Part shown: piece by piece, positions 1,940 to 59,079 of the stretch | Layout of the letters: every line of letters begins with the position of its first letter | Position numbering within the stretch: position 1 is the first letter of the stretch | DNA from: Camelus dromedarius | Taxonomy: Eukaryota | Direction of reading: 5' to 3' | Length of the DNA stretch: 64,000 bases | Assembly: GCF_036321535.1 (NCBI RefSeq) | Contig: NC_087467.1 | Span: 620,001-684,000, forward strand | Translations under genes and position numbers: made by a program | Notes under the pieces: model-generated | The model's database searches: none | What the model saw: only the letters and a program-made list of their open reading frames with translations | Told to the model about the DNA's origin: nothing

Positions 1940-2062
1940 GGATCTTGTTTCACTATTAAAAGCTTTTAGACTGTTCGGACGGATCTTGTTTCACTATTAA
2001 AAGCTTTTAGACTGTTCGGACGGATCTTGTTTCACTATTAAAAGCTTTTAGACTGTTCGGAC
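1940..2062. repeat. Perfect tandem triplication of a 41-nt unit
   Basis: ggatcttgtttcactattaaaagcttttagactgttcggac occurs at 1940-1980, 1981-2021 and 2022-2062 with no mismatches. Confidence 0.97.
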
Positions 2063-3445: not shown

Positions 3446-3796
3446 TTAAAATGACGTGATATTGTGCTCTGTAGGTAAAGTGTGTACTCTTGTTTCTCTC
3501 AGAGGAGAATTATATATGGTCACATACATTTTTATAAAATTAAGTTGCATGAAACCAGTATAACTAATACTTAAAATTAGTAGGTGTCTCAGTCCAATCA
3601 CAAATGACTTGAAAATAATTTGTTTAATAAATTTTAGATGTCATTATAATCGAACCTTTTATAAATTATGTAATCCAGTTGATTATACATTGGAAAAGTA
3701 TTTTGATAGTAATACTCTTAAATAAAAACATTTGATAAATATTTTCTTTCGAAATATTTTAGCATTTATTTATTTATTTTCTTGTTTTTAATTTAG

Positions 3797-3867
3797 ATGG
3801 GTCTAGGGAAGACAATTCAAGCAGCTGGCGTTGCTTCTATAAGGAGGGATGGCCTCTTTTAATAGTG
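3797..3867 (+). pseudogene. ZRANB3: ZRANB3 Walker A exon remnant, frameshifted and 3'-truncated
   Basis: Acceptor ttgtttttaatttag precedes ATG at 3797. The frame reads MGLGKTIQAAGVASIRRDGLF* with TAA at 3860-3862. The homologous FYKEGWPLLIV lies in a shifted frame starting at 3835, and similarity stops near 3867. Confidence 0.88.
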
Positions 3868-3906
3868 TCATTAGTTCCTTTAGGGTATATTTTTAAAGTT
3901 ATATGT

Positions 3907-3915
3907 AAAAAAAAA

Positions 3916-3953
<38 letters not shown>
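3907..3953. repeat. Compound (A)n(TA)n(CA)n microsatellite
   Basis: Directly visible, about 40 nt after the truncated ZRANB3 exon. Confidence 0.95.
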
Positions 3954-5652
3954 TTTAAAATTATTTGAATATGCCTACTTTATATGTACCTTAAATATAC
4001 TTTAAACTATTTTAGGGTATAAAAATACATTTTACAATTTTTCAGTGATTAACTTGAAACTCATGAACTTCTGTTATCGGCAACAATGGTAGGCTTTGCT
4101 TAGAAGTTGTTAGTTAATATGCAAGTTTTATGTAAAACAAAATTAATGTTAACCCATTCCGCCGCGCGCTGCCGCGGCCAGTTCTGCTTTGACCCCCGCA
4201 CCGTCATCTGAAATAAACATACCTACGTGTAAGTAAGTATTCGTAAAATATTTCCCCTCTATCATCTTTTATAGTATTCAGGTCTTCTAATTTTTATTAT
4301 TATTTTGGAAGTATACTCTTGCAGTTAAATAGTGGCTGTTATTTTTGGGATATGATAGTATTACAACCCCAGAGGATGACTTTTCTGCAGGATGTCAGCT
4401 AAGGGCAGAAAACCTTACCCATTGTCTTCTAGGAACTTAAAGAAACAGCTTTAGGTTTATAGTAACGTGTGACAACATTATTACCGCAAATACATTTACC
4501 TCTTTTTGTCATATGTCTGTGAGGCCTGGACCGTCTGCTTGTCAAGACGTGGCAGGATAATAGCTGCGGTGACCTGTGACGCCCTTGTCTTCTGTATTTT
4601 GCTCTTAGTATATGAGTTAGTTAGCAGTATTAACCCTATACTTTTCATCAGCAGGCTTTTCTGTCAGGAGGTGCAGTAGGAAATTCATCAAGTCTCTATA
4701 TTGAATAGATTCATTCAGGGCTTAAATGCAGTTATCCTTAAGAAAAAAAATTGTCATGTTGGTACTGGCCATTTAGGAGATCTGACTTTTCTGTTAAAGG
4801 GTAGAGAACTGCAGAAGATTGACACTGCCCTGTGTTTTTCACTGGTGACATAGAATATGCAAAAGTGACATGTTTTATTGTTAATGAATTTATTTATCTA
4901 ATTATTTCATTCTGCAAACTCACTGGGAGTGTAACAGAGATGAATAAGGTACATTCCTTACCCTCACTAATCTTATAAGAGAAATAAATATGTAAATGAA
5001 TAATTTCATTATAGTATGATAGACAATATTATAGATGTATGAATTATAGAGATAATTTAAAAGAGCAGAGATGACTTCAGCCCAGTGTATCTCTGGGTGA
5101 GGTTGTACCCTCCTCCTGTCTTCCTCACACCTTACTGCCCCAGGGCAATGGCCATTTTTGCTGTCACCATGATAGGGACTCTACTGGCCTTTAATGAGAG
5201 GGTTCAGGAATGTGAAATGCACCACAGTACCCTGGACAGCCGTACAATACTAAGTGTCATCCTGCTCAAGATTTCAGTAGCACTTGAGTTGAGAAACACT
5301 GCTGTCCTCTTTTTTGGAAGGCTTCATTGTATAGTCAACTAATATTTGTGTACTTTTTATGTATGATTCCAGATGCATGGAAACAAATATTCTCAGAAAG
5401 TAATGTTCTTACCCTAGTAAAATGTGGCTAGCTGTATGTTAAAATATTCAGAAGACCATTTAACCAAAAATTTGGATTCTAATTTATCATATTTGAAGAT
5501 GGTAAAATCTTAAGAGATATTAGGTTTCAGCAATGTGCCATCTCTTCTTTTTCCTCCTCTCTTCTCCTTCGTATTTCTTCCCAAAGAGTTACATTGTTTT
5601 TGATATATTGGTTACTAAGATATATTTAAAGTGCATGGATTTTCTTTTGTAG

Positions 5653-5902
5653 GAGAATATCGGCCAGCAAAGTGCCAGTTCTGGATTATGGTCTGTTAAC
5701 CACAGATGCCGAGACGTTGACAGATGCCCAGATGTTGACAGATGCCCTGAATAATCAGAATTTTAGAGTCGTTACTGTGGGTGAATCTTGCTCCATGACG
5801 TCCAGAAATGCAGCTCGCAGCAGGATTTCACTGCCACTGGTCCAGAAAGCCACATCAGCCGTTCTTCTTATAGGAACCCCAGCTCTGGGAAGGCCTGAAG
5901 AG
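5653..5902 (+). pseudogene. ZRANB3: ZRANB3 Walker B / motif III exon remnant (open frame, degenerate motifs)
   Basis: Acceptor tttcttttgtag. The exon is 250 nt: 1 + 77 codons of the recalled human exon (232 nt) plus an 18-nt duplication. It overlaps the ORF-track entry 5672..5932 and is followed by gcatca instead of a GT donor. Confidence 0.92.
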
Positions 5903-6337
5903 GCATCAACATCCTTATACTTTGGGCTTTAAAAAAAGAACTGAATCGATCACTGTTTTTGTAATTTTTAATTTTAAATTTGATGCCCCAGATGCCATAA
6001 GAGCACATTGGGAATTTCTAGACAGCTGTTCATGATTAAATACATCTTTTGCCATGGCTGCTTTTATCTGTTTACATGTGAGCCTTAGCCATGCTTATAG
6101 TTGTATATAAAAAATAGCATCTACCATTATTATAAGATGTTCATATTTAGTACACATTTGTAATATTCTTCATATTTGTGTTCTTAAGGTTTTTCTATAG
6201 TCTTAACTTTCAATTATCTAGTTTATTTTACATCTCCCTAGGATTGGGGTTGAATCTCCTCTGTACCTTTTAGACTACATTACATAACTCCTCTCTCTTC
6301 CTCTTTCACTTCAAAATCCACATTTGGGAAGGTAGAG

Positions 6338-6434
6338 GGGTGGGTACAGCTCAGTGATAGAGCACTGTGCTTAGCGTGCACAAGGTCCTGGGTTCAATTC
6401 CCAGTACCTCCACTAATAACAACAAATGTAAATA
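6338..6434 (+). mobile_element. tRNA-Ala-derived SINE, camelid Vic-1 type, with target-site duplication
   Basis: gggtgggtacagctcagtgatagagcactgtgcttagcgtgcacaaggtcctgggttcaattcccagtacctcc (A box, B box) plus an A-rich tail. It is flanked by the direct repeat caaaatccacatttgggaaggtagag at 6312-6337 and 6435-6460. Confidence 0.85.
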
Positions 6435-6624
6435 CAAAATCCACATTTGGGAAGGTAGAGAGAAAATAGAAGTTATGTGCAGACCAGGGGGGATATCTGC
6501 TCTGAATGGAAGAATAAGGCATTTGTTTGATGCCCTATTTAGCTTTTACAGCTCTAAGAGGCAGATGGGGTATGGAGTAATTAAAAGGCTGGGAAGGAAA
6601 AATGAAGGATGAAACACTATTAAG

Positions 6625-6790
6625 GGTCAGTGTAACCTGGGGAAGCCCTGTCTGTGAAGGAGCGCCCAGTCAAAAAAAAAAAAAAAATACAGGCTTGTTG
6701 CTTGGTAGGGTTGTTGTGAGAATTAGAAGAAATACTGCTTTGAAAGTGCTGTGTCCTGGGCCTGGCATACATAGTAAGCACTCAGCTAAG
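6625..6790 (+). mobile_element. MIR SINE fragment
   Basis: gggttgttgtgagaattagaaga..aaagtgctgtg..cctggcatacatagtaagcactca matches the MIR 3' half. Confidence 0.65.
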
Positions 6791-7381
6791 GGTGTCCTTT
6801 GTTGTTACTGGTTATTAAGTCAGGCCCGAGTGATAGCTATTGCACAGCACCTCTGCTGGCATTACCAAGGGTCTGCTTTTGAACGCTGCCCTGGAATTCT
6901 TCAAATATGCAGAACAGTACATAGACAAAGACGGTAAAATTCTCAATTTCACCTTTTTAAATTTTTTGCTCTTGGATACATACTGGAAGTGGGAGAGTAG
7001 ACCCCAAGTAATTTACTTATGTTCTAAAATTATGTCACTGAATAATGGGATTTATTATGTGTTTATGAAAAATATATAAGATGTATCATTTAAGAAGGAG
7101 AGTATATAAAAGATAGGTATATTTTAAATGATAATAGAAAAATGAATCCTCAGCTATTGATTACCTAGCACAGGAAAGAGGATGCTGGCAGTACAGCAGT
7201 GGCTCCTGTGCACCATGTGATTACACGCCAGCACCTTCACTCCTCACCCAGGGCACCACTGTTCTCAGCAAGGGGAAGTCCTGGTTTTCTGGATCACGAT
7301 GATTCTACAATTTGGGGATGTTGCAACTCTTTAAGAAAAAAATATAAAATTACAAATCCTAAATAAGGAGTTCTGAAACTG

Positions 7382-9205
7382 GTGAGTCCTCTAACTTTGT
7401 GTTTCTTTTTCAAGATTATTTTGGATATTCTGGGTCCCTTGAATTTCCATATGAATTTTTTGTAGAACTTGGTAATTTTTGCAGAGAATCCAGCTTAGAT
7501 TTTCATAAGTATTGTGTTGAATCTGTAGGTCACGTTGGATTGTATTGCCATGTTAACAATATTGTCTAGAAATCTATGAACATGGGAGATCTTTCCATTT
7601 ATTTGAGTTTTTAATTAAATTTAATTTTCCAACTGTGCTTTGAAGCTTTAACAGTATAAGTCTTATGCTGCTTTTGTGAAGTATTCTTTTTAATGCTATT
7701 GTTAATAGATTTTTATTGATTTTATTTGTGGAATGTTTATTAAAAGTATATAGAAATACAGTCATTTTTGTGCATTGATCTTGTATCCTGCGACCTTGCT
7801 GAACTCATTTATTAGTTCTAATACTTTTTAGTGGGTTCCTTAGGATTTTCCATATACATGATCATGTCATTTCCAAATAGAGATGGTTTTACTTCTTTCT
7901 TTCCAATCTGGATGCCTTTTATTGTATTTTCTAGCATAAATAGCCAATTCTTGCCCTGGCTAGAACTTCCAGTACAGTTTTGAATGGAAATGGCAAGTGT
8001 GGGCATCCTTTTTGTTCCTAATCTTGGGAAGAAATCTATCTTTTATTGCTACATATTAACTATGTTAACTGTGGGGTTTTTGTAGATTTCCGTTACAAGA
8101 TTGAGCAAGTTCTTTACTATCTCTTGTTTATTGTGTGTTTAATCATGAAGGGATATTGAATTTTGTAAGCCTCTTTTCTGCATCTATTGAGGCAATCATA
8201 ATGGTTTTTATCCTTTATCCTACTGATAGGGTGTATTGTATTAGTTGATTTTCATGTTAAACCAACCTTGCATTCTAAGATAAATCTCGCCTGGTCACAG
8301 TATATAATCCTTGTATATGTTGCTGGATTCACTTTGTTAGTATTTTGTAGATGATAGTTGTGTCTATATTCATACAAGATATTGTTCTGTAGTTTTTTTG
8401 TTGTATCTTTGTTCAGTTTCTTATTGTCTTGGTATTGAAGTAGTGCTGACCTCAGAGAATGAGATGAGAATTGTTCCCTCCTATTCTTTTTTTTGGAAGG
8501 GTTTGCAAAACACTGGTATTACTTAAAAAAAAAAAAACATTTGGTGAATTTGATGATGATTTCTGGGCCTGAGCTTTTCTTTGTGGGCAGTTTTTAGATT
8601 AATAATTCATTCTCTTCACTGAATAAATTTCTATTCAGATTATCTATTTCCTTTTGAGTCAGTTTTGATATTTGTGTTTTTTTAGGAAGTTGTCCATTTC
8701 ATCTATATTATCTAATATAGTGGCATCCAGTTTTCATGGAATTCTTATAATTCTTTGTATTTCTGTGAGGTTTATAGTAATGTCCCCTTTTATTTCTGGT
8801 TTTAGAAATTTGAATTTTATCTTGGCAGTCTAGCTAAAATTTTATCAACTTTGTTGATCTCTATAAGAACCAACTATTGGTTTCACTGATTTTTTTTTGT
8901 ATTGCTTTCCATTCTCTATTTTGTTTATTTACATTCTTTATGTTATTTCTTCTGTTTGTTTTGGGTATAATTTGCTCTTCCTTTCCCAGTATCTCAAGGT
9001 GAAAATTTAGATTATTAATTTGAGAACTTTCTTCTTTTTTAGTATAGATATATACCAATATAAATTTTTCTCTACACACTGCTTTCACAGCATCTCATTT
9101 TTGGTATGTTGTCTCCTCAAATTTCATTTATTGCAAAGTCTTTTCTAATTTCCAGTTTACCTTGTGGTTTCTTTTTTGAACAGTTGGTTATTTAGAAGTA
9201 TACTG
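7382..9205 (-). mobile_element. Decayed L1 ORF2 segment, antisense
   Basis: Minus-strand ORFs give L1 ORF2 peptides: [29 protein letters not shown] (RT core, cf. LSLFADDMIVYLENP) at 7818..8006 and KAVCREKFILVYIYTKKEESSQINNLNFHL at 8861..9088. The segment has many stops and frameshifts. Confidence 0.9.
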
Positions 9206-9209
9206 TCAT

Positions 9210-9825
9210 ATAAAAAGGATGCAAAGCAACAAAGCCACTTTGGGAAACACTTCGGCCATTCCTCAATAAGTTAAAAATTGAAATACTATAACCTAGCAAA
9301 TCCCTTCTTAGGTATATACTCAAGAGAATTGAAAACATACGTTCACAACGTACAGATGTTCACAGTGCCATTATTCATGATATCCAAAAAGTGGGGAGAA
9401 GCCAGTGTCCATAACTGCTGAATGGATCAACAAAATGCAGCCATAAAAAGGAATGAAGTGCTGATTCACTCTACAGCGTGGGTGAGCCTTGAAGACACTA
9501 TGCTAAGTGAAAGGAGCCACACACAAAGACTACATATTTTATGATTCAGTTTTTATGAAATGTCCAAAATAGGCAAATTCATAGAGCTAGGAAATAGATT
9601 AGTGGTTGCCAAGACTGGGAGAGAGGGAGACTGGGATTAGTGATGAGTATAGATTTTTTTTTTGGAGTCATAAAAATGTTCCAGAATTAGATAGTGGTGA
9701 TCAAGACACAACTTTGTGAATCTACTAACAAGACACTGATTTGTACACGTTAAAAGTCAGAACAATAAAACTGGTATATGAATTTATATCTCAAGCTGTT
9801 ATTTTTTTTAAAATATTAAAATAAC
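9210..9825 (+). mobile_element. L1 3' end (ORF2 tail and 3' UTR), sense
   Basis: gccactttgggaaacac..taggtatatactcaagagaattgaaaacatacgttcac..tagtggttgcc..ttagatagtggtgat.., ending in an A/T-rich tail. Confidence 0.8.
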
Positions 9826-10642
9826 ACTACTAAGTGCAGCGTATTAAAGTTATAAAAATGGATAGATTTCATGATACAATTGATGAAAGTGTTAATTGGG
9901 ACTTTTTTTTTTTTTTTTTTACAGTGCAGCATGGTAACATCTATCAAATTTTAAAAAGCATATACCTTAAATTTACCTGTTTCATTTCTAAAAATGTACC
10001 CTATAAACCCATCTAATACAGATGCATATAGGGGATGGACAGACAAGACAAATGAGTGACAGGTGTAACTGTCAATGCATATACATACACCTACACCTAC
10101 ATATATATATATATATGTGCACTCATACACATAGACTTAACCAAGTTATTAATTTTTAATAATTGCATAGAAGCTAGAAACAGCCTATATGTCCATTATC
10201 AGAAGACTGTTTAAATCTTTCAGTCTATCTACATAATAATGGGTTGCTCTGCCACCTTTAAGTAGTGTTTTATTATTTTAATAGATTGCTTCTATGATTT
10301 TAAAACTAAAAATTAAATATATATGTACTTTAATGATGTCTAGGACATGTTTGGGGGGACAGAATTCTAATTGTGTATTATAATATGATCCTTTCCTGTG
10401 AATAAAAGAGAATATATACATAAGCTTATGTAGGCATGCAACGTATATATATGTACACTGAAGAAAAGGTTAGCATTTATTCCTGAAGAACAGGATGGCA
10501 AGGATGAGTGGATGGAGGGGAACGAGGAGCATTGAGGGAAAAAGTAGATTTTTTTTTCACTTTTTACTTTTTCATTAAGTGGATTCATCATAGTAATAAT
10601 AGTTTACTAGAAAATATAACATATTGAGAACACTTGTGTCAG

Positions 10643-10728
10643 CTTTTCATGCACATTGAAGCTCTCTTTCCACAAAAGTTTGGAACGTGGACCGACTACG
10701 CCAAAAGATACTGTAATGCACACATCAG
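10643..10728 (+). pseudogene. ZRANB3: ZRANB3 86-nt exon, apparently intact in isolation
   Basis: gtgtcag|CTT TTC ATG CAC ATT GAA GCT CTC TTT CCA CAA AAG TTT GGA ACG TGG ACC GAC TAC GCC AAA AGA TAC TGT AAT GCA CAC ATC AG|gtatga, which reads LFMHIEALFPQKFGTWTDYAKRYCNAHI(R). Confidence 0.92.
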
Positions 10729-11029
10729 GTATGACAGACTGTCTCATATTTACCGTGAACATTAAGCGTCATCAGTTAGCCTTTGTCCCGATGTTTTTCA
10801 AACTTGTGGTAGCCGTAGAATAGTTTCAAGTAAAATCTTGTGTGGATGACCCATATGTAAAATAAATAATCAAAAGTTGACAATGGCAGTTTTTCTTTAT
10901 TTTTTACCTTCCAAGCATTTCATTTTTGAAATTATTTATTTGTATTGATACCTGTGCGAGTTACGAAAAAGTGAAAAGTAAGTGCCCATTCCACCCAAGG
11001 CTCCCAGTCAGCCGTTTCCCTCGCAAGTA

Positions 11030-13544: not shown

Positions 13545-14130
13545 ATCCACTCATTCAAAGAATATTTATAGGGAGATGGGTAGAGCTCAGTGGTAGAGTG
13601 TGTGCTTAGCACGCACAAGGTCCTGGGTTCAATCCCCAGTGCCTCTAAATAAATTTTAAAATAAGATAATTTTTAAAAATATTGATAAGGTGCCTGTGAC
13701 CTGCCATGCCTGTGCTCGGTATCAAGCATAGATTAGAGAACAAGACTAAAGTATGGATCAGAGAACAAGGTCCCCAGCCTTCACTGTTTTCAAGTCAGAT
13801 GCTCACCAGATAATCACAGCTGTGATGAGTGTCATAAAAGGGAGGCAAAGGGCATAGTGGCAGAGTTCAGTAGAATTATTTCAGTCACTACAATCAAAAG
13901 GACCAAGAGGCGTCCTGTGAGGAAGTGATACTGACTTGTGTTCCAGGATGAGGACTTTTACGCAGTAAGGCTCAGAGCAAATGAGGCTGCCCTGTCTTTG
14001 AGGAAGTAAAAGAAGTCCAGTTCAGCTGATTATTCCTGAGCTAACTGAAGAGCGGGTCTCAAGACAAGATGCAGTTAGGCAGGGTCATGTCATACAGGGT
14101 CTTGTACTTCCTGTAATAGCAGTCAGAAGG
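13545..14130 (-). mobile_element. L2 LINE fragment carrying a SINE insertion
   Basis: cactcattcaaagaatattt..gtgcctgtgacctgccatgcctgtgct..acaaggtccccagccttca..; L2 3'-end pattern. Confidence 0.55.
13571..13678 (+). mobile_element. tRNA-Ala-derived SINE, camelid Vic-1 type
   Basis: gggagatgggtagagctcagtggtagagtgtgtgcttagcacgcacaaggtcctgggttcaatccccagtgcctct plus an A-rich tail. Imperfect TSD aatatttata / aatattgata. Confidence 0.85.
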
Positions 14131-27893: not shown

Positions 27894-28115
27894 NNNNNNN
27901 NNNNNNNNNNNNNNNNNNNNNNNNNNNNNNNNNNNNNNNNNNNNNNNNNNNNNNNNNNNNNNNNNNNNNNNNNNNNNNNNNNNNNNNNNNNNNNNNNNNN
28001 NNNNNNNNNNNNNNNNNNNNNNNNNNNNNNNNNNNNNNNNNNNNNNNNNNNNNNNNNNNNNNNNNNNNNNNNNNNNNNNNNNNNNNNNNNNNNNNNNNNN
28101 NNNNNNNNNNNNNNN
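27894..28115. other. Assembly gap (222 N)
   Basis: Run of N. Confidence 0.99.
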
Positions 28116-38556: not shown

Positions 38557-38712
38557 NNNNNNNNNNNNNNNNNNNNNNNNNNNNNNNNNNNNNNNNNNNN
38601 NNNNNNNNNNNNNNNNNNNNNNNNNNNNNNNNNNNNNNNNNNNNNNNNNNNNNNNNNNNNNNNNNNNNNNNNNNNNNNNNNNNNNNNNNNNNNNNNNNNN
38701 NNNNNNNNNNNN
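38557..38712. other. Assembly gap (156 N)
   Basis: Run of N. Confidence 0.99.
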
Positions 38713-41700
38713 GATTCAGCCCGAATGGCAGAATCATCAATCGTCTGTGATGAAATTAGGTGCCTAGAGCTTGTGGCATATACAATGTTTTAGTCCTAAT
38801 GGTCTGAGAGTTTTTTCCCTGATATGCATTGAGAAACGCTTCCCTTGCTTCTCGTTGGGGAAATGGATCGCAGCCACAATCGACCAGATGAGCTAAATGA
38901 CCTTTCCTTATTTGAAATGCCCTGGGATTTTACAAGAGGAAAAGATCCATATATGCAAGAGGAAGTGCAATGTAAACTTTTCAAAGGCACTTTAATAGGC
39001 TGCTTTTAAAATATAATTTAAATGTGGAGGAACCCCAGTACGGAATACTTATATTGACTAAAGACAAGATGTCTTTCAGACTTTGGAGGCACGGCATTAT
39101 TTATTCTGTAGCAAACAGCAAATAAAAGATGCTGTCAATAGTATTGCTTTTGTCTATACAGGGCTTTGTATTTGCTAAAGCATGTTATGTTTAGTTCTTG
39201 CAATAATATCCAGAAGAAAGAGTTGTGTCTTATTCCATTGTACAGACAGTGAGCTTAAGAAACTCCACAGTCAACAACAGAGCGTGCCAGGATGGGTTAG
39301 ACCAAAATTGTTCTTTCTGTTACCCGCCATTGTCTCCCCAATATTTTAGTAGGAGTAGCAATGAGCCATTCTATAATGAAAGTATTTTGCATGTAGGACA
39401 ATGAATAAGAAAGTAAACTTTAAATGGTACGCTAGTTGCTGATACAACCACACCCTTCCGTCTTTACATATAAAGGTCAACAGCAAACATCGCTATATTT
39501 TTGCAATACCTGATGAGGAAGACATTGTTATTTCTCAACTTGCAAGCTTCCAAAACAGGCTGAATAAGAATACTTTCTCTGCATTGATTACAAAAGACAC
39601 ATGTTTCACATTTCCCCGAGTCAACTCTCTGTACCTGGGTACCGTTGTTGTTAGGGATTTGATTTTGTTTAATTTTGTTTTGTTGTCATTGGAGATAGCT
39701 AAGTGGCTGTGAGAGGAATTAGTGTTTATTTAGGACTATTCATCATGCCTGTTACACAATTCAAGGCCCAGGGCTAACCACTTCACATCTATTAACAGCT
39801 CAGTCTCCAAGCAGCTTCCTAAATTAATCTGCTTGCCAAAAGTATCCTCTGATTCACAGTTAAGAGGGAAAGGAAATCCTCCAGTTCCCTGGGATAGTGC
39901 TCATTAGCATAGGGCACATATAGACATTGCAGATCTCCTCGGATTTGCTGGTATTTACATACTGTTTGACATGCATTAGGATGTAAAGGATGGGCACTCT
40001 AAAATGTTAGCCCACTGGGCAAATGAACTAGAATCAAATGCATACTGTTAGCACTGCTTTCCTGTTCAATTACACAGCGGTTTGGTTAAGAGTTGAGTTG
40101 ACACAAGCCTGCCAATCCCCATTCTTTATGATAGTCAAATGTCAAGTACGTTGCAAGCGAGCATTGGCATATGACAAATCGATACAAAATCAGTGGTAAT
40201 GAGGGCTTTATGGAAGTCCAGGTTACACACTTAGGTGAGGATAAATGAAACTGTAAGAAACGAGGTCAGGGCAGATTTTAGGTTCAGGCTCCTCTGGTTC
40301 TTCTTAGCAGATATGCTGTTTTCATTCTCCTCTGTGATAATACCCTTTAGAACGTAAGTCAGCTGAGCCACAGTCGCATCCCCGTTCACTGTTCCTAAGC
40401 TTCTCGATGCTGCAATATACCTAACACCACGTACAGAGGTACTGTCATGCACATTTGGTTTACTTCTTCATTGACGATGGATTCCAAGTACAGAGGAGTG
40501 AAATGACTTGGACTTCAAAGAGAGTGACAAAGTGTGTGAGATCAGCAATAAAAATCTAGGCTCATTAATTATAGAATTTAGAAATTTTCAATTTTTGGCC
40601 CCTGATCTTTCATGGTGGCTGGAGTTTTGACACCTCTCACCTGAGCGAGTGTGCCAGGAATGCTCAAAACATCTTCCAAACAGCAGAAGGACCATTTGAA
40701 CTGAAGAGGAGTCTTCGGGCATGCCATATTCTGGGAATACAGACTTGATCAAATAATTTGATTTCTCTGAGACTGTTTTTATTTCTCAGGTAACAGAAGC
40801 AAAATATGTATCACAGTGTTTGACACATATTGGGATTTCTGGTATATATGAAGCATTCAAGATACAATAGCAATTATTCTTAATTTGCTTTTCTTCACCA
40901 CCATCACCATGGAATATTGGCAAGGTCTTAGACCATTTTGTCATAGATCAGGATTCACATACCTGTCATTCTACAATTACTCTGTGTGTCTCTAGAAACA
41001 TCTCTTGTCCTCCCAGAATCTCTGTAACTCCATCTAAAAATTGAGGATAACAGAATTATCTAGGTGCAATATTGTAAGTAGTACAGTACAGATCACATTA
41101 CAAATCACTAAAAATGAAAGTTATAATATTTATTAAATAACAATGTATACTTATAAATATATAATTTTAAATAGATGTAATATAACCTATGCAATATATA
41201 TGTGCTATAATATATGAATGAGACATATATTGAAATATTATATTATTTATTATTATCATCATTATTCACATTTATGAAGGGACACATTTAACCATGTATT
41301 TTTGCCAGTGAACTATTTCTACTCTAATTTTTAAATGCAGAGAAATTAGCAAGGTGATTATAGTTACAAATCTTTACCAAAAAAGGAGTAAAGAATAGAG
41401 ATTTTAAAAACCAATGATTAATGAGCTTCAATCCCTAACTGAAAAAGAAAGAAAAAAAGGACTTTCTGAGGATGACCTCTGGGTCTTTCCTCTTTAGCTA
41501 CATTCTATTCTCATGTTTATCTCTTTTCAGGATTGAAAAACATCTGAATGGTCCCTCATTCAGTCATTAAGAAGGGACCAGGAACATAACACTCCACTCT
41601 CTTCTCATTTGAGACCCACCTGCGTGGAGATCACTGGGGGCATTAGAGTAAGGATGACACTATCAGTCATTACATTTTGCATTTCTATAGTGATTTATTC

Positions 41701-56490: not shown

Positions 56491-57999
56491 CTGTGAAGAT
56501 ATCCCAGGTCTTGAACTCCACAGCGAGCATAAAGGAAATATGTGAAGATGGGGATGATGGCAAACAGGCCTTCTGAGGAGCTGCCTCTGCTAAACTCCAG
56601 GAGATTATTATGAAGGGAGAATGTGCATCTAATATTGCTTCAGATGCTAGTATTTCTAGAGATGCTGAAGCTCCAGATGTTTCCTCAGTGAAACTCTCAT
56701 GAAATGTGCACAATGAATTCTATTAAGAAACTGAAAACACCCTTAGCTGAAAAGCATCCACAGCATAATTAACTCTTTGTTTTGGGGGCCAGAGAAGCAC
56801 CAGCCATACTTTGAACCATTGACCATTTCATCATCCTTAAACAAAAATATATCTCAGGGTACAATTCATCAGATTTCTCAAGATTTCTTAAACATAAAGA
56901 GAGACTTGTAAAGGACATCTTTTTATATTTCTGAAAGAGTGGGAGTCGTGATCTTTTTCTCAAAACTGTCTTTCCTCCCTGTGTACATACTTTTGTAAAG
57001 TGACATTTTGATATCAGACCATTTGATATATGTTCTGGTAGCAAAGTGGCCATAACTCAAATTTCAGGGACCGCTGCCTTTCCCAGAATTTCATACAAAA
57101 TAAGTCAATGTCTAGATATGAATATATACTCACAGAGTTAAAATTTCCTACACATTTAAATTTTATTAATAATCATGATGTTTAGTAAAGAAGCCAACTA
57201 ATGAAATATTGAAACCAACTTAGACATAAAGCAATTATGCCAATAGGGGAGTGATTGAGCTAACTCACTTACTTGACAAAATATTAACATGTTCAAAAAT
57301 GACAGGAAATCTCTTTTGGAAGAATGAGAAGATAAATCACATCTAATGTCAAATAAAAACAGCAAAATTCTATAAGATATTTGGAATATGAAGCTAAAGT
57401 TTTTTAAAAAGTTGCTGAATTAAAAATGCTGGTAGAAAAATATGAAGAATGGATGGGTTAGGGAGGGAAATTATAAGTAATTACAATTATAAAATTATAA
57501 ATTATAAATGAAATCTTTTTATTTTGATCTCCATTTTCTGGATAATGACTATCAATGAAAATGTTTTCCCATATTTGAGTGTTTATGAGTGTATGTATAT
57601 TGCATCTTCTGCCAAATTTATTGCATAATGTAGAACAGTTATCTATATTGGAACAAAATGAAAACCAGCCATAACATCAAGCAGGGTCTTACCCTGCTCT
57701 GTTCACGTTTTTTATCTTGAGTTTGATAAGTTTTTTATCTCAACTCTGCTTTGCTCTGCCCGTATGCACATGACTTTCTTGCAAATTCAGATGAAGGAAG
57801 ATTTAAAATGAGACCAGACGCTAATTTCCTCAGCATCTTCTCTTAGACAAATTGCCAGATGCTCCCTCGGTGGGGGAAGATGAGCTGCAGTGGTTGTCAC
57901 AGGGGTTAGAAGAAAACGCCTAACGAAGCACCTGCAGGAACAGGTTAAGGCTGAAACCATCTCTGGGGGAAGCCCCGGGGCGGGCTCGAGCCCTCACCT

Positions 58000-58748
58000 G
58001 GGCTCTCGCAGGTCAGCACATCTCACCTGGGCTCTCTCAGGCGGGCGCGCCTCTCCGGGGCTCTCTCAGGCCGGCGCGCCTCGGCCGGGCTCCCTCAGGC
58101 CGGCGCGCCTCGGCCGGGCTCCCTCAGGCCGGCGCGCCTCAGCCGGGCTCTCTCAGGCCGGCGCTCCTCTCCGGGGCTCTCTCAGGCCGGCGCGCCTCAG
58201 CCGGGCTCCCTCAGGCCGGCGCGCCTCTCCGGGGCTCTCTCAGGCCGGCGCGCCTCGGCCGGGCTCCCTCAGAACGGCGCTCCTCGGCCGGGCTCTCTCA
58301 GGCCGGCGCTCCTCTCCGGGGCTCTCTCAGGCCGGCGCGCCTCAGCCGGGCTCCCTCAGGCCGGCGCTCCTCTCCGGGGCTCTCTCAGGCCGGCGCGCCT
58401 CGGCCGGGCTCCCTCAGGCCGGCGCTCCTCGGCCGGGCTCTCTCAGGCCGGCGCTCCTCTCCGGGGCTCTCTCAGGCCGGCGCGCCTCGGCCGGGCTCCC
58501 TCAGAACGGCGCTCCTCGGCCGGGCTCTCTCAGGCCGGCGCTCCTCTCCGGGGCTCTCTCAGGCCGGCGCTCCTCGGCCGGGCTCTCTCAGGCCGGCGCT
58601 CCTCTCCGGGGCTCTCTCAGGCCGGCGCACCTCGGCCGGGCTCCCTCAGGCCGGCGCGCCTCTCCGGGGCTCTCTCAGGCCGGCGCGCCTCGGCCGGGCT
58701 CTCTCAGGCCGGCGCGCCTCGGCCGGGCTCTCTCAGGCCGGCGCGCCT
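58000..58748. repeat. GC-rich 29-nt minisatellite (1 diverged edge unit, 24 full units, 1 partial)
   Basis: Unit gggct(c/t-variant)ctcaggccggcgc(g/t)cctc(ggcc/agcc/tccg), with no indels from 58029 to 58748. A typical unit is 24/29 G+C with 3-5 CpG. Confidence 0.97.
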
Positions 58749-59079
58749 GTGCAGACTGCACTTGACACCCTGAGAAAACAGGCCTAGAAGGAAATGTCAG
58801 CGTCGTTCCAGGGAGTTCATTTGTTGGCAGGCTATGTCGCAGTGTTCCAGGGAGACGAGATAAACTCTTACTCAGAAGTTCTACTTAGAATTCGAAGCAC
58901 ATTTACCCAAAATTAAAGCATCGTGTTTGATCGGCTTTTACAGGCCCAGACTCATTCAAAAATGAAGGGAGGGTCATGTATTCCTGGAAGACTCCTATTT
59001 TCGATCATGAGTGAGGTAGACTCAGAGATGGGGGGAGAGGCAGATTCACGGATGGGAGAGAGACAGGGAGACTGACAAA

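What the first reader, a model, noticed from the sequence alone, without database searches (positions are those of the whole stretch)
3797..10728. Disabled ZRANB3 gene copy in a camelid: gene loss or hidden segmental duplicate
Seen: three correctly ordered, intron-separated helicase exons, so this is not a retrocopy, with several independent lesions. Established: ZRANB3 is a SNF2-family translocase/endonuclease recruited to polyubiquitinated PCNA for replication-fork reversal, alongside SMARCAL1 and HLTF. Inference: this is either a unitary loss of a fork-remodelling gene, which would be notable, or a partial duplicate that decayed while an intact copy survives elsewhere. The window alone cannot decide.
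Basis: partly seen in the sequence, partly recalled or inferred. Interest (0 to 1): 0.75.

Follow-up and report, generated by a model that had tools for sequence, protein, structure and literature searches.

The report
Decayed duplicate of ZRANB3's first exons
The window holds a broken, still transcribed copy of a few early exons of the DNA-repair helicase gene ZRANB3, but camelids also carry an intact ZRANB3, so this is an ordinary duplicated pseudogene and not a gene loss.

Summary
Three ZRANB3 helicase exons lie in order on the + strand, separated by introns.

- **Exon A' (3797-3888):** a 4-bp deletion, TAA and TAG stops, and its 3' half and splice donor missing.
- **Exon B' (5653-5902):** open, but with an 18-bp tandem duplication. 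It has 15 nonsynonymous against 4 synonymous lineage-specific changes. The DExH box reads GESC, motif III reads IGTP, and the donor is GC instead of GT.
- **Exon C' (10643-10728):** intact.

No other ZRANB3 exon occurs in the 64 kb.

The gene-loss reading is refuted. A full-length 1077-aa ZRANB3 with all its domains is annotated in Camelus dromedarius, C. bactrianus, C. ferus and Vicugna pacos, and its exon A-C residues are intact. Three DNA runs each hold the window form unchanged, plus a second contig class about 9% different at equal depth. That means two genomic copies.

Shared and private residues place the duplication in the camelid stem, before the Camelus/Vicugna split.

An RNA run shows exon B' spliced to an upstream, diverged ZRANB3 exon, skipping A'. 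That reading frame stops at 5752-5754, so the transcript is non-coding.

The extent of the duplicate and its chromosomal position remain unknown. Interest is low.

The parts
3797..3888 (+). Exon A' (the MGLGKT / Walker A exon, camel ZRANB3 residues 61-92). It has a 4-bp deletion at 3829/3830 and TAA TAG stops at 3860-3865. The last ~87 bases of the exon and its donor are missing. The acceptor ag at 3795-3796 is kept.
   Evidence: a contig of run X1 covers 3600-3897 with 0 differences
3889..4233 (.). Lineage-specific filler that replaces the 3' half of exon A and the start of the intron. It contains an A/TA/CA microsatellite at about 3898-3963. It also contains a 75-bp G+C-rich stretch at 4159-4233 that one contig class of runs X9 and X12 lacks.
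   Evidence: No alignment to L009, L006 or L013 before 4234-4256; joint 4158>4234
5653..5902 (+). Exon B' (camel residues 120/121-197; motif II DExH and motif III). The reading frame is open but the exon has 15 nonsynonymous against 4 synonymous private substitutions: DESH>GESC, TGTP>IGTP and LGYG>LDYG among them.
   Evidence: contigs with 0 differences in runs X1, X9 and X12
5711..5746 (+). Two 18-bp tandem units, where all other mammals compared have one. This is an in-frame 6-codon insertion (TDAQML).
5903..5904 (+). The exon B' splice donor reads GC, where the four other mammal contigs aligned at DNA level read GT.
10643..10728 (+). Exon C' (camel residues 198-226). The frame is open and both splice sites are intact. 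It has one private change (Q>H) and keeps the ancestral T where the real camelid gene has A.

Best explanation
The three exons belong to an unprocessed (intron-containing) duplicated pseudogene of ZRANB3. A genomic segment carrying at least four early helicase exons was copied in the camelid stem lineage: the exon ending RCMVADE, which lies upstream of the window, plus A, B and C. The other copy remained the functional ZRANB3. The copy in the window lost constraint and accumulated changes at about the neutral rate:
- a frameshift, stops and a truncated exon A';
- a destroyed ATPase motif II and a damaged motif III in B';
- a weakened donor on B'.

The copy is still transcribed and spliced. Because A' has no donor it is skipped, which shifts the frame and ends translation 33 codons into B'. 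The product is a non-coding, probably unstable, RNA and no helicase.

Shown: the lesions, the second copy, the intact camelid protein, the neutral substitution pattern and one splice junction.

Inferred: that the second contig class is the annotated functional gene, the date of the duplication, that it is partial, and that the RNA has no function.
For: 1. **Intact gene elsewhere.** The P0302 cluster holds 1077-aa ZRANB3 proteins of C. dromedarius, C. bactrianus, C. ferus and V. pacos on chromosome-scale records. None is flagged low quality. Pfam finds SNF2-rel_dom, Helicase_C, a RanBP zinc ribbon and HNH. The HNH part matches solved ZRANB3 5mkw at E 8e-70. The dromedary gene spans 181,780 bp. 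Its exon A-C residues are intact and differ from the window at 15 aligned positions plus the 6-residue insertion in exon B, and at 2 positions in exon C.

2. **Two copies in the genome.** In runs X1, X9 and X12 the bins at 4410-4733 and 5139-5300 hold exactly two contigs of near-equal depth, for example 9.6 and 9.1 or 39.5 and 44.7. One is identical to the window. The other carries the same 44 differences and 6 gap letters over 406 letters, or 38 differences and 23 gap letters over 446 letters, in all three runs.

3. **Neutral decay.** Window-private substitutions in B' number 19 of 231, against 30 of 524 in the flanking intron. They split 15 nonsynonymous to 4 synonymous, against 1:9 and 3:2 for two intact species.

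4. **Camelid origin and age.** The window shares R (NFRVV) and L (LLPLVQ) with the camelid gene only, among the laurasiatherians compared. It keeps ancestral N and T where both Camelus and Vicugna genes have derived D and A.

5. **Transcription.** RNA run X15 has a contig over exactly 5653-5901 with 1 difference, at depth 34 against about 8 in the intron. Another contig joins the sequence encoding QAVRCMVADE directly to 5653. That frame stops at 5752-5754.
Against: - I could not obtain DNA of the annotated camelid gene, because its range is too long. The identity of the second contig class with the functional gene is therefore inferred, not shown.
- No contig of the second class was laid over exon B itself. 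The tool silently drops human-like contigs, so this says nothing either way.
- The chromosomal position of the window relative to RAB3GAP1 and R3HDM1 is unknown. Which copy sits at the ancestral locus is therefore not shown.
- The 53 kb after C' with no further exon could be one long intron rather than the end of the duplicate.
- The RNA evidence rests on Logan contigs of one laid run.
Confidence: 0.85

Rival explanations
1. Unitary loss: this is the only ZRANB3 locus of the animal, and the fork-remodelling gene is dead in camelids.
For: Disabling lesions are real and present in several individuals. Introns align collinearly with the ZRANB3 locus of cattle-like and horse-like contigs at 75-79%.
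Against: - Intact 1077-aa ZRANB3 proteins exist in four camelid species, and their exon A-C residues differ from the window.
- A second genomic copy is seen at equal depth.
- A duplicate would also keep collinear introns, so the intron alignment does not favour this reading.
Confidence: 0.02
2. Role swap: the window is the ancestral, syntenic ZRANB3 locus that decayed, and the intact gene is the derived copy that took over. This would be gene relocation by duplication and reciprocal loss.
For: Nothing specific. The tools gave no synteny for either copy. The window copy keeps ancestral N and T where the real gene has derived D and A, which is neutral on this point.
Against: - No further ZRANB3 exon lies in the 53 kb downstream. 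That fits a partial copy better than the full ancestral gene.
- The real gene spans 182 kb, as expected for a full locus.
Confidence: 0.08
3. Assembly or haplotype artefact: the lesions, or the apparent second copy, come from mis-assembly or from two divergent alleles.
For: The best DNA holder may be the sample the window was assembled from (note).
Against: - The window form occurs with 0 differences in runs of three studies and two organism labels. The stretch is held at 0.94-0.96 of its words in 14 runs; all holders together come from 11 studies.
- A 9% difference with identical variant sets and 1:1 depth in every individual is not allelic variation.
Confidence: 0.03

Closest known systems
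ZRANB3 (DNA annealing helicase and endonuclease; SNF2 family; camel XP_031307176 = P0302)
   Same: Exons A', B' and C' are homologous to residues 61-92, 121-197 and 198-226 of the camelid protein, with the same exon boundaries and collinear introns.
   Different: - There is no open frame.
- The Walker A exon is frameshifted and truncated.
- DExH reads GESC and TGTP reads IGTP.
- No Helicase_C, zinc-ribbon or HNH exons lie in the window.

It cannot make the enzyme.
Unprocessed (duplicated) pseudogenes arising from segmental duplication
   Same: It keeps introns and splice sites, has an intact parent gene in the same genome, shows neutral substitution with a nonsynonymous to synonymous ratio of about 3.75:1, carries several independent disabling lesions, and has residual transcription.
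   Different: Nothing essential. The boundaries and location of the duplicated segment are not yet known.
Processed pseudogene / retrocopy
   Same: Both are dead copies of a gene.
   Different: Introns of 1.8 and 4.7 kb are present and align with the orthologous introns of other mammals. There is no poly(A) tail or fused exons.

Membership tests
Functional ZRANB3 / SNF2 ATPase | Continuous open reading frame across the helicase exons | tested here: not met
   Frameshift and TAA TAG stops in A'. Skipping A' gives a stop at 5752-5754.
Functional ZRANB3 / SNF2 ATPase | Motif II DExH (Walker B) and motif III TGTP conserved | tested here: not met
   The window reads GESC and IGTP. DESH and TGTP are invariant in 15 other mammalian sequences.
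Functional ZRANB3 / SNF2 ATPase | Helicase_C, RanBP zinc ribbon and HNH domains encoded downstream | tested here: not met
   No tblastn match to residues 228-1077 anywhere in the 64 kb. They could lie beyond the window.
Unprocessed duplicated pseudogene | Exon-intron structure of the parent gene retained | tested here: met
   The exon boundaries equal those of intact L009 and of the camel protein. Introns are collinear with other mammals at 75-79%.
Unprocessed duplicated pseudogene | Intact parent gene present in the same genome or lineage | tested here: met
   1077-aa ZRANB3 in four camelids. A second contig class appears at 1:1 depth in three DNA runs. The link between these two observations is inferred.
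Unprocessed duplicated pseudogene | Substitution pattern without purifying selection | tested here: met
   15 nonsynonymous to 4 synonymous changes. The exon rate is 8.2% against 5.7% in the intron.
Unitary pseudogene (gene loss) | No functional copy left in the genome | tested here: not met
Processed pseudogene | Introns absent | tested here: not met
   Introns of 1764 and 4740 bases lie between the exons.

The most novel reading that the evidence does not exclude
The duplicate is not inert. It may lie beside or inside the real ZRANB3 transcription unit, with its spliced, frame-broken exons acting as poison exons. Alternatively it may act as a regulatory non-coding RNA that tunes ZRANB3 output in camelid reproductive tissue. 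This would have been conserved since before the camel/llama split.
Probability: 0.05. Interest if true: 0.4.

Novelty: new member of a known kind. Interest (0 to 1): 0.13.

Why it matters
Mainly as a correction. Anyone scanning camelid genomes for gene losses would see a convincingly dead ZRANB3 here and could wrongly report loss of a replication-fork remodeller. The intact gene exists, so no change in fork-reversal biology is implied.

The copy is a modest resource:
- It is a dated, neutrally evolving marker of the camelid stem lineage.
- It is an expressed pseudogene whose reads can contaminate ZRANB3 expression or variant calls in camels.

Tried and rejected
- **Pfam on the exon pieces:** only a chance Catalase_C match at E 0.14. 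The pieces are too short and too decayed.
- **Candidate intact camelid exon-B contigs:** I fetched the contigs for P0001, P0240, P0243, P0242 and P0244. All align to the window's introns at only 67-79%, so they are other species. By their proteins they include cattle-like and horse-like sequences. They served as outgroups.
- **Exon-B query against the protein collection:** no copy of the window's own ORF and no camelid fragment. The length limit means longer models were not seen.
- **Locus look-ups:** P0002 and P0008 are not on record. The dromedary gene is listed without DNA because its range is too long. So Ks, exact intron sizes and synteny could not be computed.
- **Self-comparison of the window:** the second copy is not within these 64 kb.
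- **The upstream RCMVADE exon:** not in the window, with 0 matches at up to 3 mismatches.
- **Literature:** no paper links ZRANB3 to pseudogenes, gene loss or camels in a relevant way.
- **Scan notes:** nothing beyond this same finding.
- **Weak second match to exon C at 40377-40466:** 33% identity, E about 1-2, containing a stop. I judged it chance.
Full report
**What is in the sequence**

The window is A+T-rich mammalian DNA with SINE-like tRNA matches and two N runs.
- 3797-3880 reads MGLGKTIQAAGVASIRRDGLF, then two stops. Another frame continues as FYKEGWPLLIVSLVPL.
- 5654-5902 is open and reads RISASKVPVLDYGLLTTDAETLTDAQMLTDALNNQNFRVVTVGESCSMTSRNAARSRISLPLVQKATSAVLLIGTPALGRPEE.
- 10640-10735 reads QLFMHIEALFPQKFGTWTDYAKRYCNAHIRYD.

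A search of 1.84 billion representative proteins with the middle piece returned ZRANB3 proteins and exon fragments as the best hits, down to E 2.6e-21. The names were confirmed. tblastn of full-length ZRANB3 proteins (caecilian P0007, jerboa P0005, camel P0302) against the window finds only these three collinear matches and nothing else credible in 64 kb.

**Anatomy and lesions**

A contig of another mammal that carries intact exons A and B (L009) shows that exon A is 179 nt, encoding MGLGKT...KTDVG, with the last Gly codon completed by exon B.

In the window, exon A' keeps its acceptor. It has a 4-bp deletion at 3829/3830 and TAA TAG at 3860-3865 in the original frame. It stops resembling the exon after about 3888. 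The remaining ~87 nt and the donor are replaced by lineage-specific sequence with a microsatellite (3889-4233). Homology with other mammals resumes at 4234-4256.

Exon B' (5653-5902) has no stop but carries several changes:
- an 18-bp tandem duplication at 5711-5746;
- a GC donor in place of GT;
- private replacements at otherwise invariant positions: LGYG>LDYG, DESHYMK>GESCSMT (ATPase motif II), KRAILLTGTP>TSAVLLIGTP (motif III).

Exon C' (10643-10728) has intact splice sites and one private change.

**Is it decaying neutrally?**

I aligned exon B and its flanks with a cattle-like, a horse-like and a rodent-like contig.
- The window lineage has 19 private substitutions in 231 exon sites (8.2%), against 30 in 524 intron sites (5.7%).
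- The two intact laurasiatherian lineages show 4.3% and 2.2% in the exon, against 5.7% and 5.9% in the intron.
- The 19 changes split 15 nonsynonymous to 4 synonymous, against 1:9 and 3:2 in the intact lineages.

That is the pattern of a sequence without purifying selection.

**Are the lesions real?**

The stretch 3600-6000 is held at 0.94-0.96 of its sampled words by 14 DNA runs; all runs that hold it come from 11 studies.

I laid contigs of three DNA runs from three studies and two organism labels on this stretch.
- The window form of exon B' (5473-5901) appears with 0 differences in all three runs.
- Exon A' is covered through 3897 with 0 differences in X1. In X9 and X12 the listed contigs end at 3810.

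This rules out an assembly slip.

**The hidden second copy**

The same call shows, in every DNA run, a second contig class at equal depth. It carries the same differences in all three runs:
- 14 differences and 8 gap letters over 211 letters (3600-3810), seen in X9 and X12;
- 44 differences and 6 gap letters over 406 letters (4373-4778), in all three runs;
- 38 differences and 23 gap letters over 446 letters (4900-5345), in all three runs.

Together these amount to about 9% substitutions. In the bins at 4410-4733 and 5139-5300, summed depth equals exactly two contigs. This is a fixed paralogous copy, not an allele.

No second-class contig was laid over exon B itself. The tool states that it drops human-like contigs without notice, so this gap is uninformative. 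The copy is not inside the window.

**An intact ZRANB3 exists in camelids**

A search with an opossum ZRANB3 lists 'DNA annealing helicase and endonuclease ZRANB3 isoform X1 [Camelus dromedarius]', 1077 aa. Its 90% cluster holds full-length proteins of C. dromedarius, C. bactrianus, C. ferus and Vicugna pacos on records of 97-105 Mb. None is flagged low quality.

Pfam finds SNF2-rel_dom, Helicase_C, ResIII, HNH and a RanBP zinc ribbon. The C-terminus matches the solved ZRANB3 HNH domain 5mkw at E 8e-70. The dromedary gene spans 181,780 bp.

Its exon A-C residues are intact, with GLGKT, DESH and TGTP. In exon B they differ from the window at 15 of 77 aligned positions plus the 6-residue insertion. 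The annotated gene is therefore not this locus. Unitary loss is refuted.

That the second contig class is this gene is the parsimonious inference, since exactly two copies are seen. I could not obtain the gene's DNA to prove it.

**When did it arise?**

Among the laurasiatherian sequences compared, only the window and the camelid genes have R in NFRVV and L in LLPLVQ. That places the duplication after camelids left the other artiodactyls.

Both the Camelus and the Vicugna genes have derived D (LNDQNF) and A (FGAW), where the window keeps the ancestral N and T. Those changes in the real gene therefore fall after the duplication and before the Camelus/Vicugna split.

The evidence is thin: two sites each way, and R and L recur in rodents. 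It agrees with the roughly 9% intron divergence, which by my own rough rate estimate means some tens of millions of years. The copy is therefore predicted to exist in New World camelids too. This is untested.

**Transcription**

RNA run X15 holds a contig over exactly 5653-5901 with one difference and 18 extra letters. Its depth is 34, against about 8-10 for the flanking intron contigs.

Another X15 contig has, immediately before 5653, letters that translate QAVRCMVADE. This is a diverged version of the real gene's RDGRCMVADE, the end of the exon that precedes exon A. That exon is not in the window.

So the pseudogene copy includes at least one more upstream exon. It is transcribed, and it splices that exon straight to B', skipping the donor-less A'. 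Because exon A is 179 nt, the skip shifts the frame. Translation would stop at TAA 5752-5754.

Exon B' words are also held by many small runs that the tool guesses to be RNA, under two organism labels.

This shows transcription and splicing. It does not show function.

**What remains open**
- The boundaries of the duplicated segment.
- Whether the 53 kb after C' is beyond the duplicate or one long intron.
- Where the window lies relative to the real gene and to RAB3GAP1 and R3HDM1.

A role swap, in which the window is the ancestral locus, is not excluded. I give it about 8%.

**Comparison and verdict**

The feature meets every tested criterion of an unprocessed duplicated pseudogene. It fails those of a functional SNF2 ATPase, of a unitary pseudogene and of a retrocopy.

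I found no paper describing it. It is a new member of a very common kind. Its main value is cautionary: it looks like loss of a fork-remodelling gene and is not.

Noticed in passing
window 6340-6412 and 13576-13647: Two Rfam tRNA matches (44.6 and 50.6 bits). They are 85% alike over 78 bases. The first sits between direct repeats of 'aaaatccacatttgggaaggtagag'. They look like tRNA-derived SINE copies rather than tRNA genes.
   Followed up: partly
window 58029-58748: A minisatellite of about 25 copies of a 29-bp G+C-rich unit, with G+C 0.71 and CpG observed/expected 0.88. It creates a spurious 291-aa ORF (57890-58765) and the only CpG-island-like signal in the window.
   Followed up: partly
window 1940-2062: A perfect 41-bp x 3 tandem repeat with 100% matches, which suggests a very recent expansion.
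   Followed up: no
window 4159-4233: A 75-bp G+C-rich stretch followed by AATAAA. It is skipped by one contig at about half the depth in DNA runs X9 and X12 (joint 4158>4234). It is either private to this copy or polymorphic.
   Followed up: no
window 5653-5901 in RNA run X15: The RNA contig over exon B' is 267 letters for 249 letters of window. The 18 extra letters may be a third copy of the 18-bp unit, which would make it a length polymorphism. There is also a G>A difference at 5771.
   Followed up: no
window 27894-28115 and 38557-38712: Two N runs of 222 and 156 bases. A short exon could in principle be hidden there.
   Followed up: no
camelid ZRANB3 proteins P0373 / P0376: The annotated isoform X2 (1017 aa) is identical to X1 from Met61 (MGLGKT) onward. 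It is therefore an alternative 5' end lacking the first 60 residues, not a skip of exon A.
   Followed up: yes
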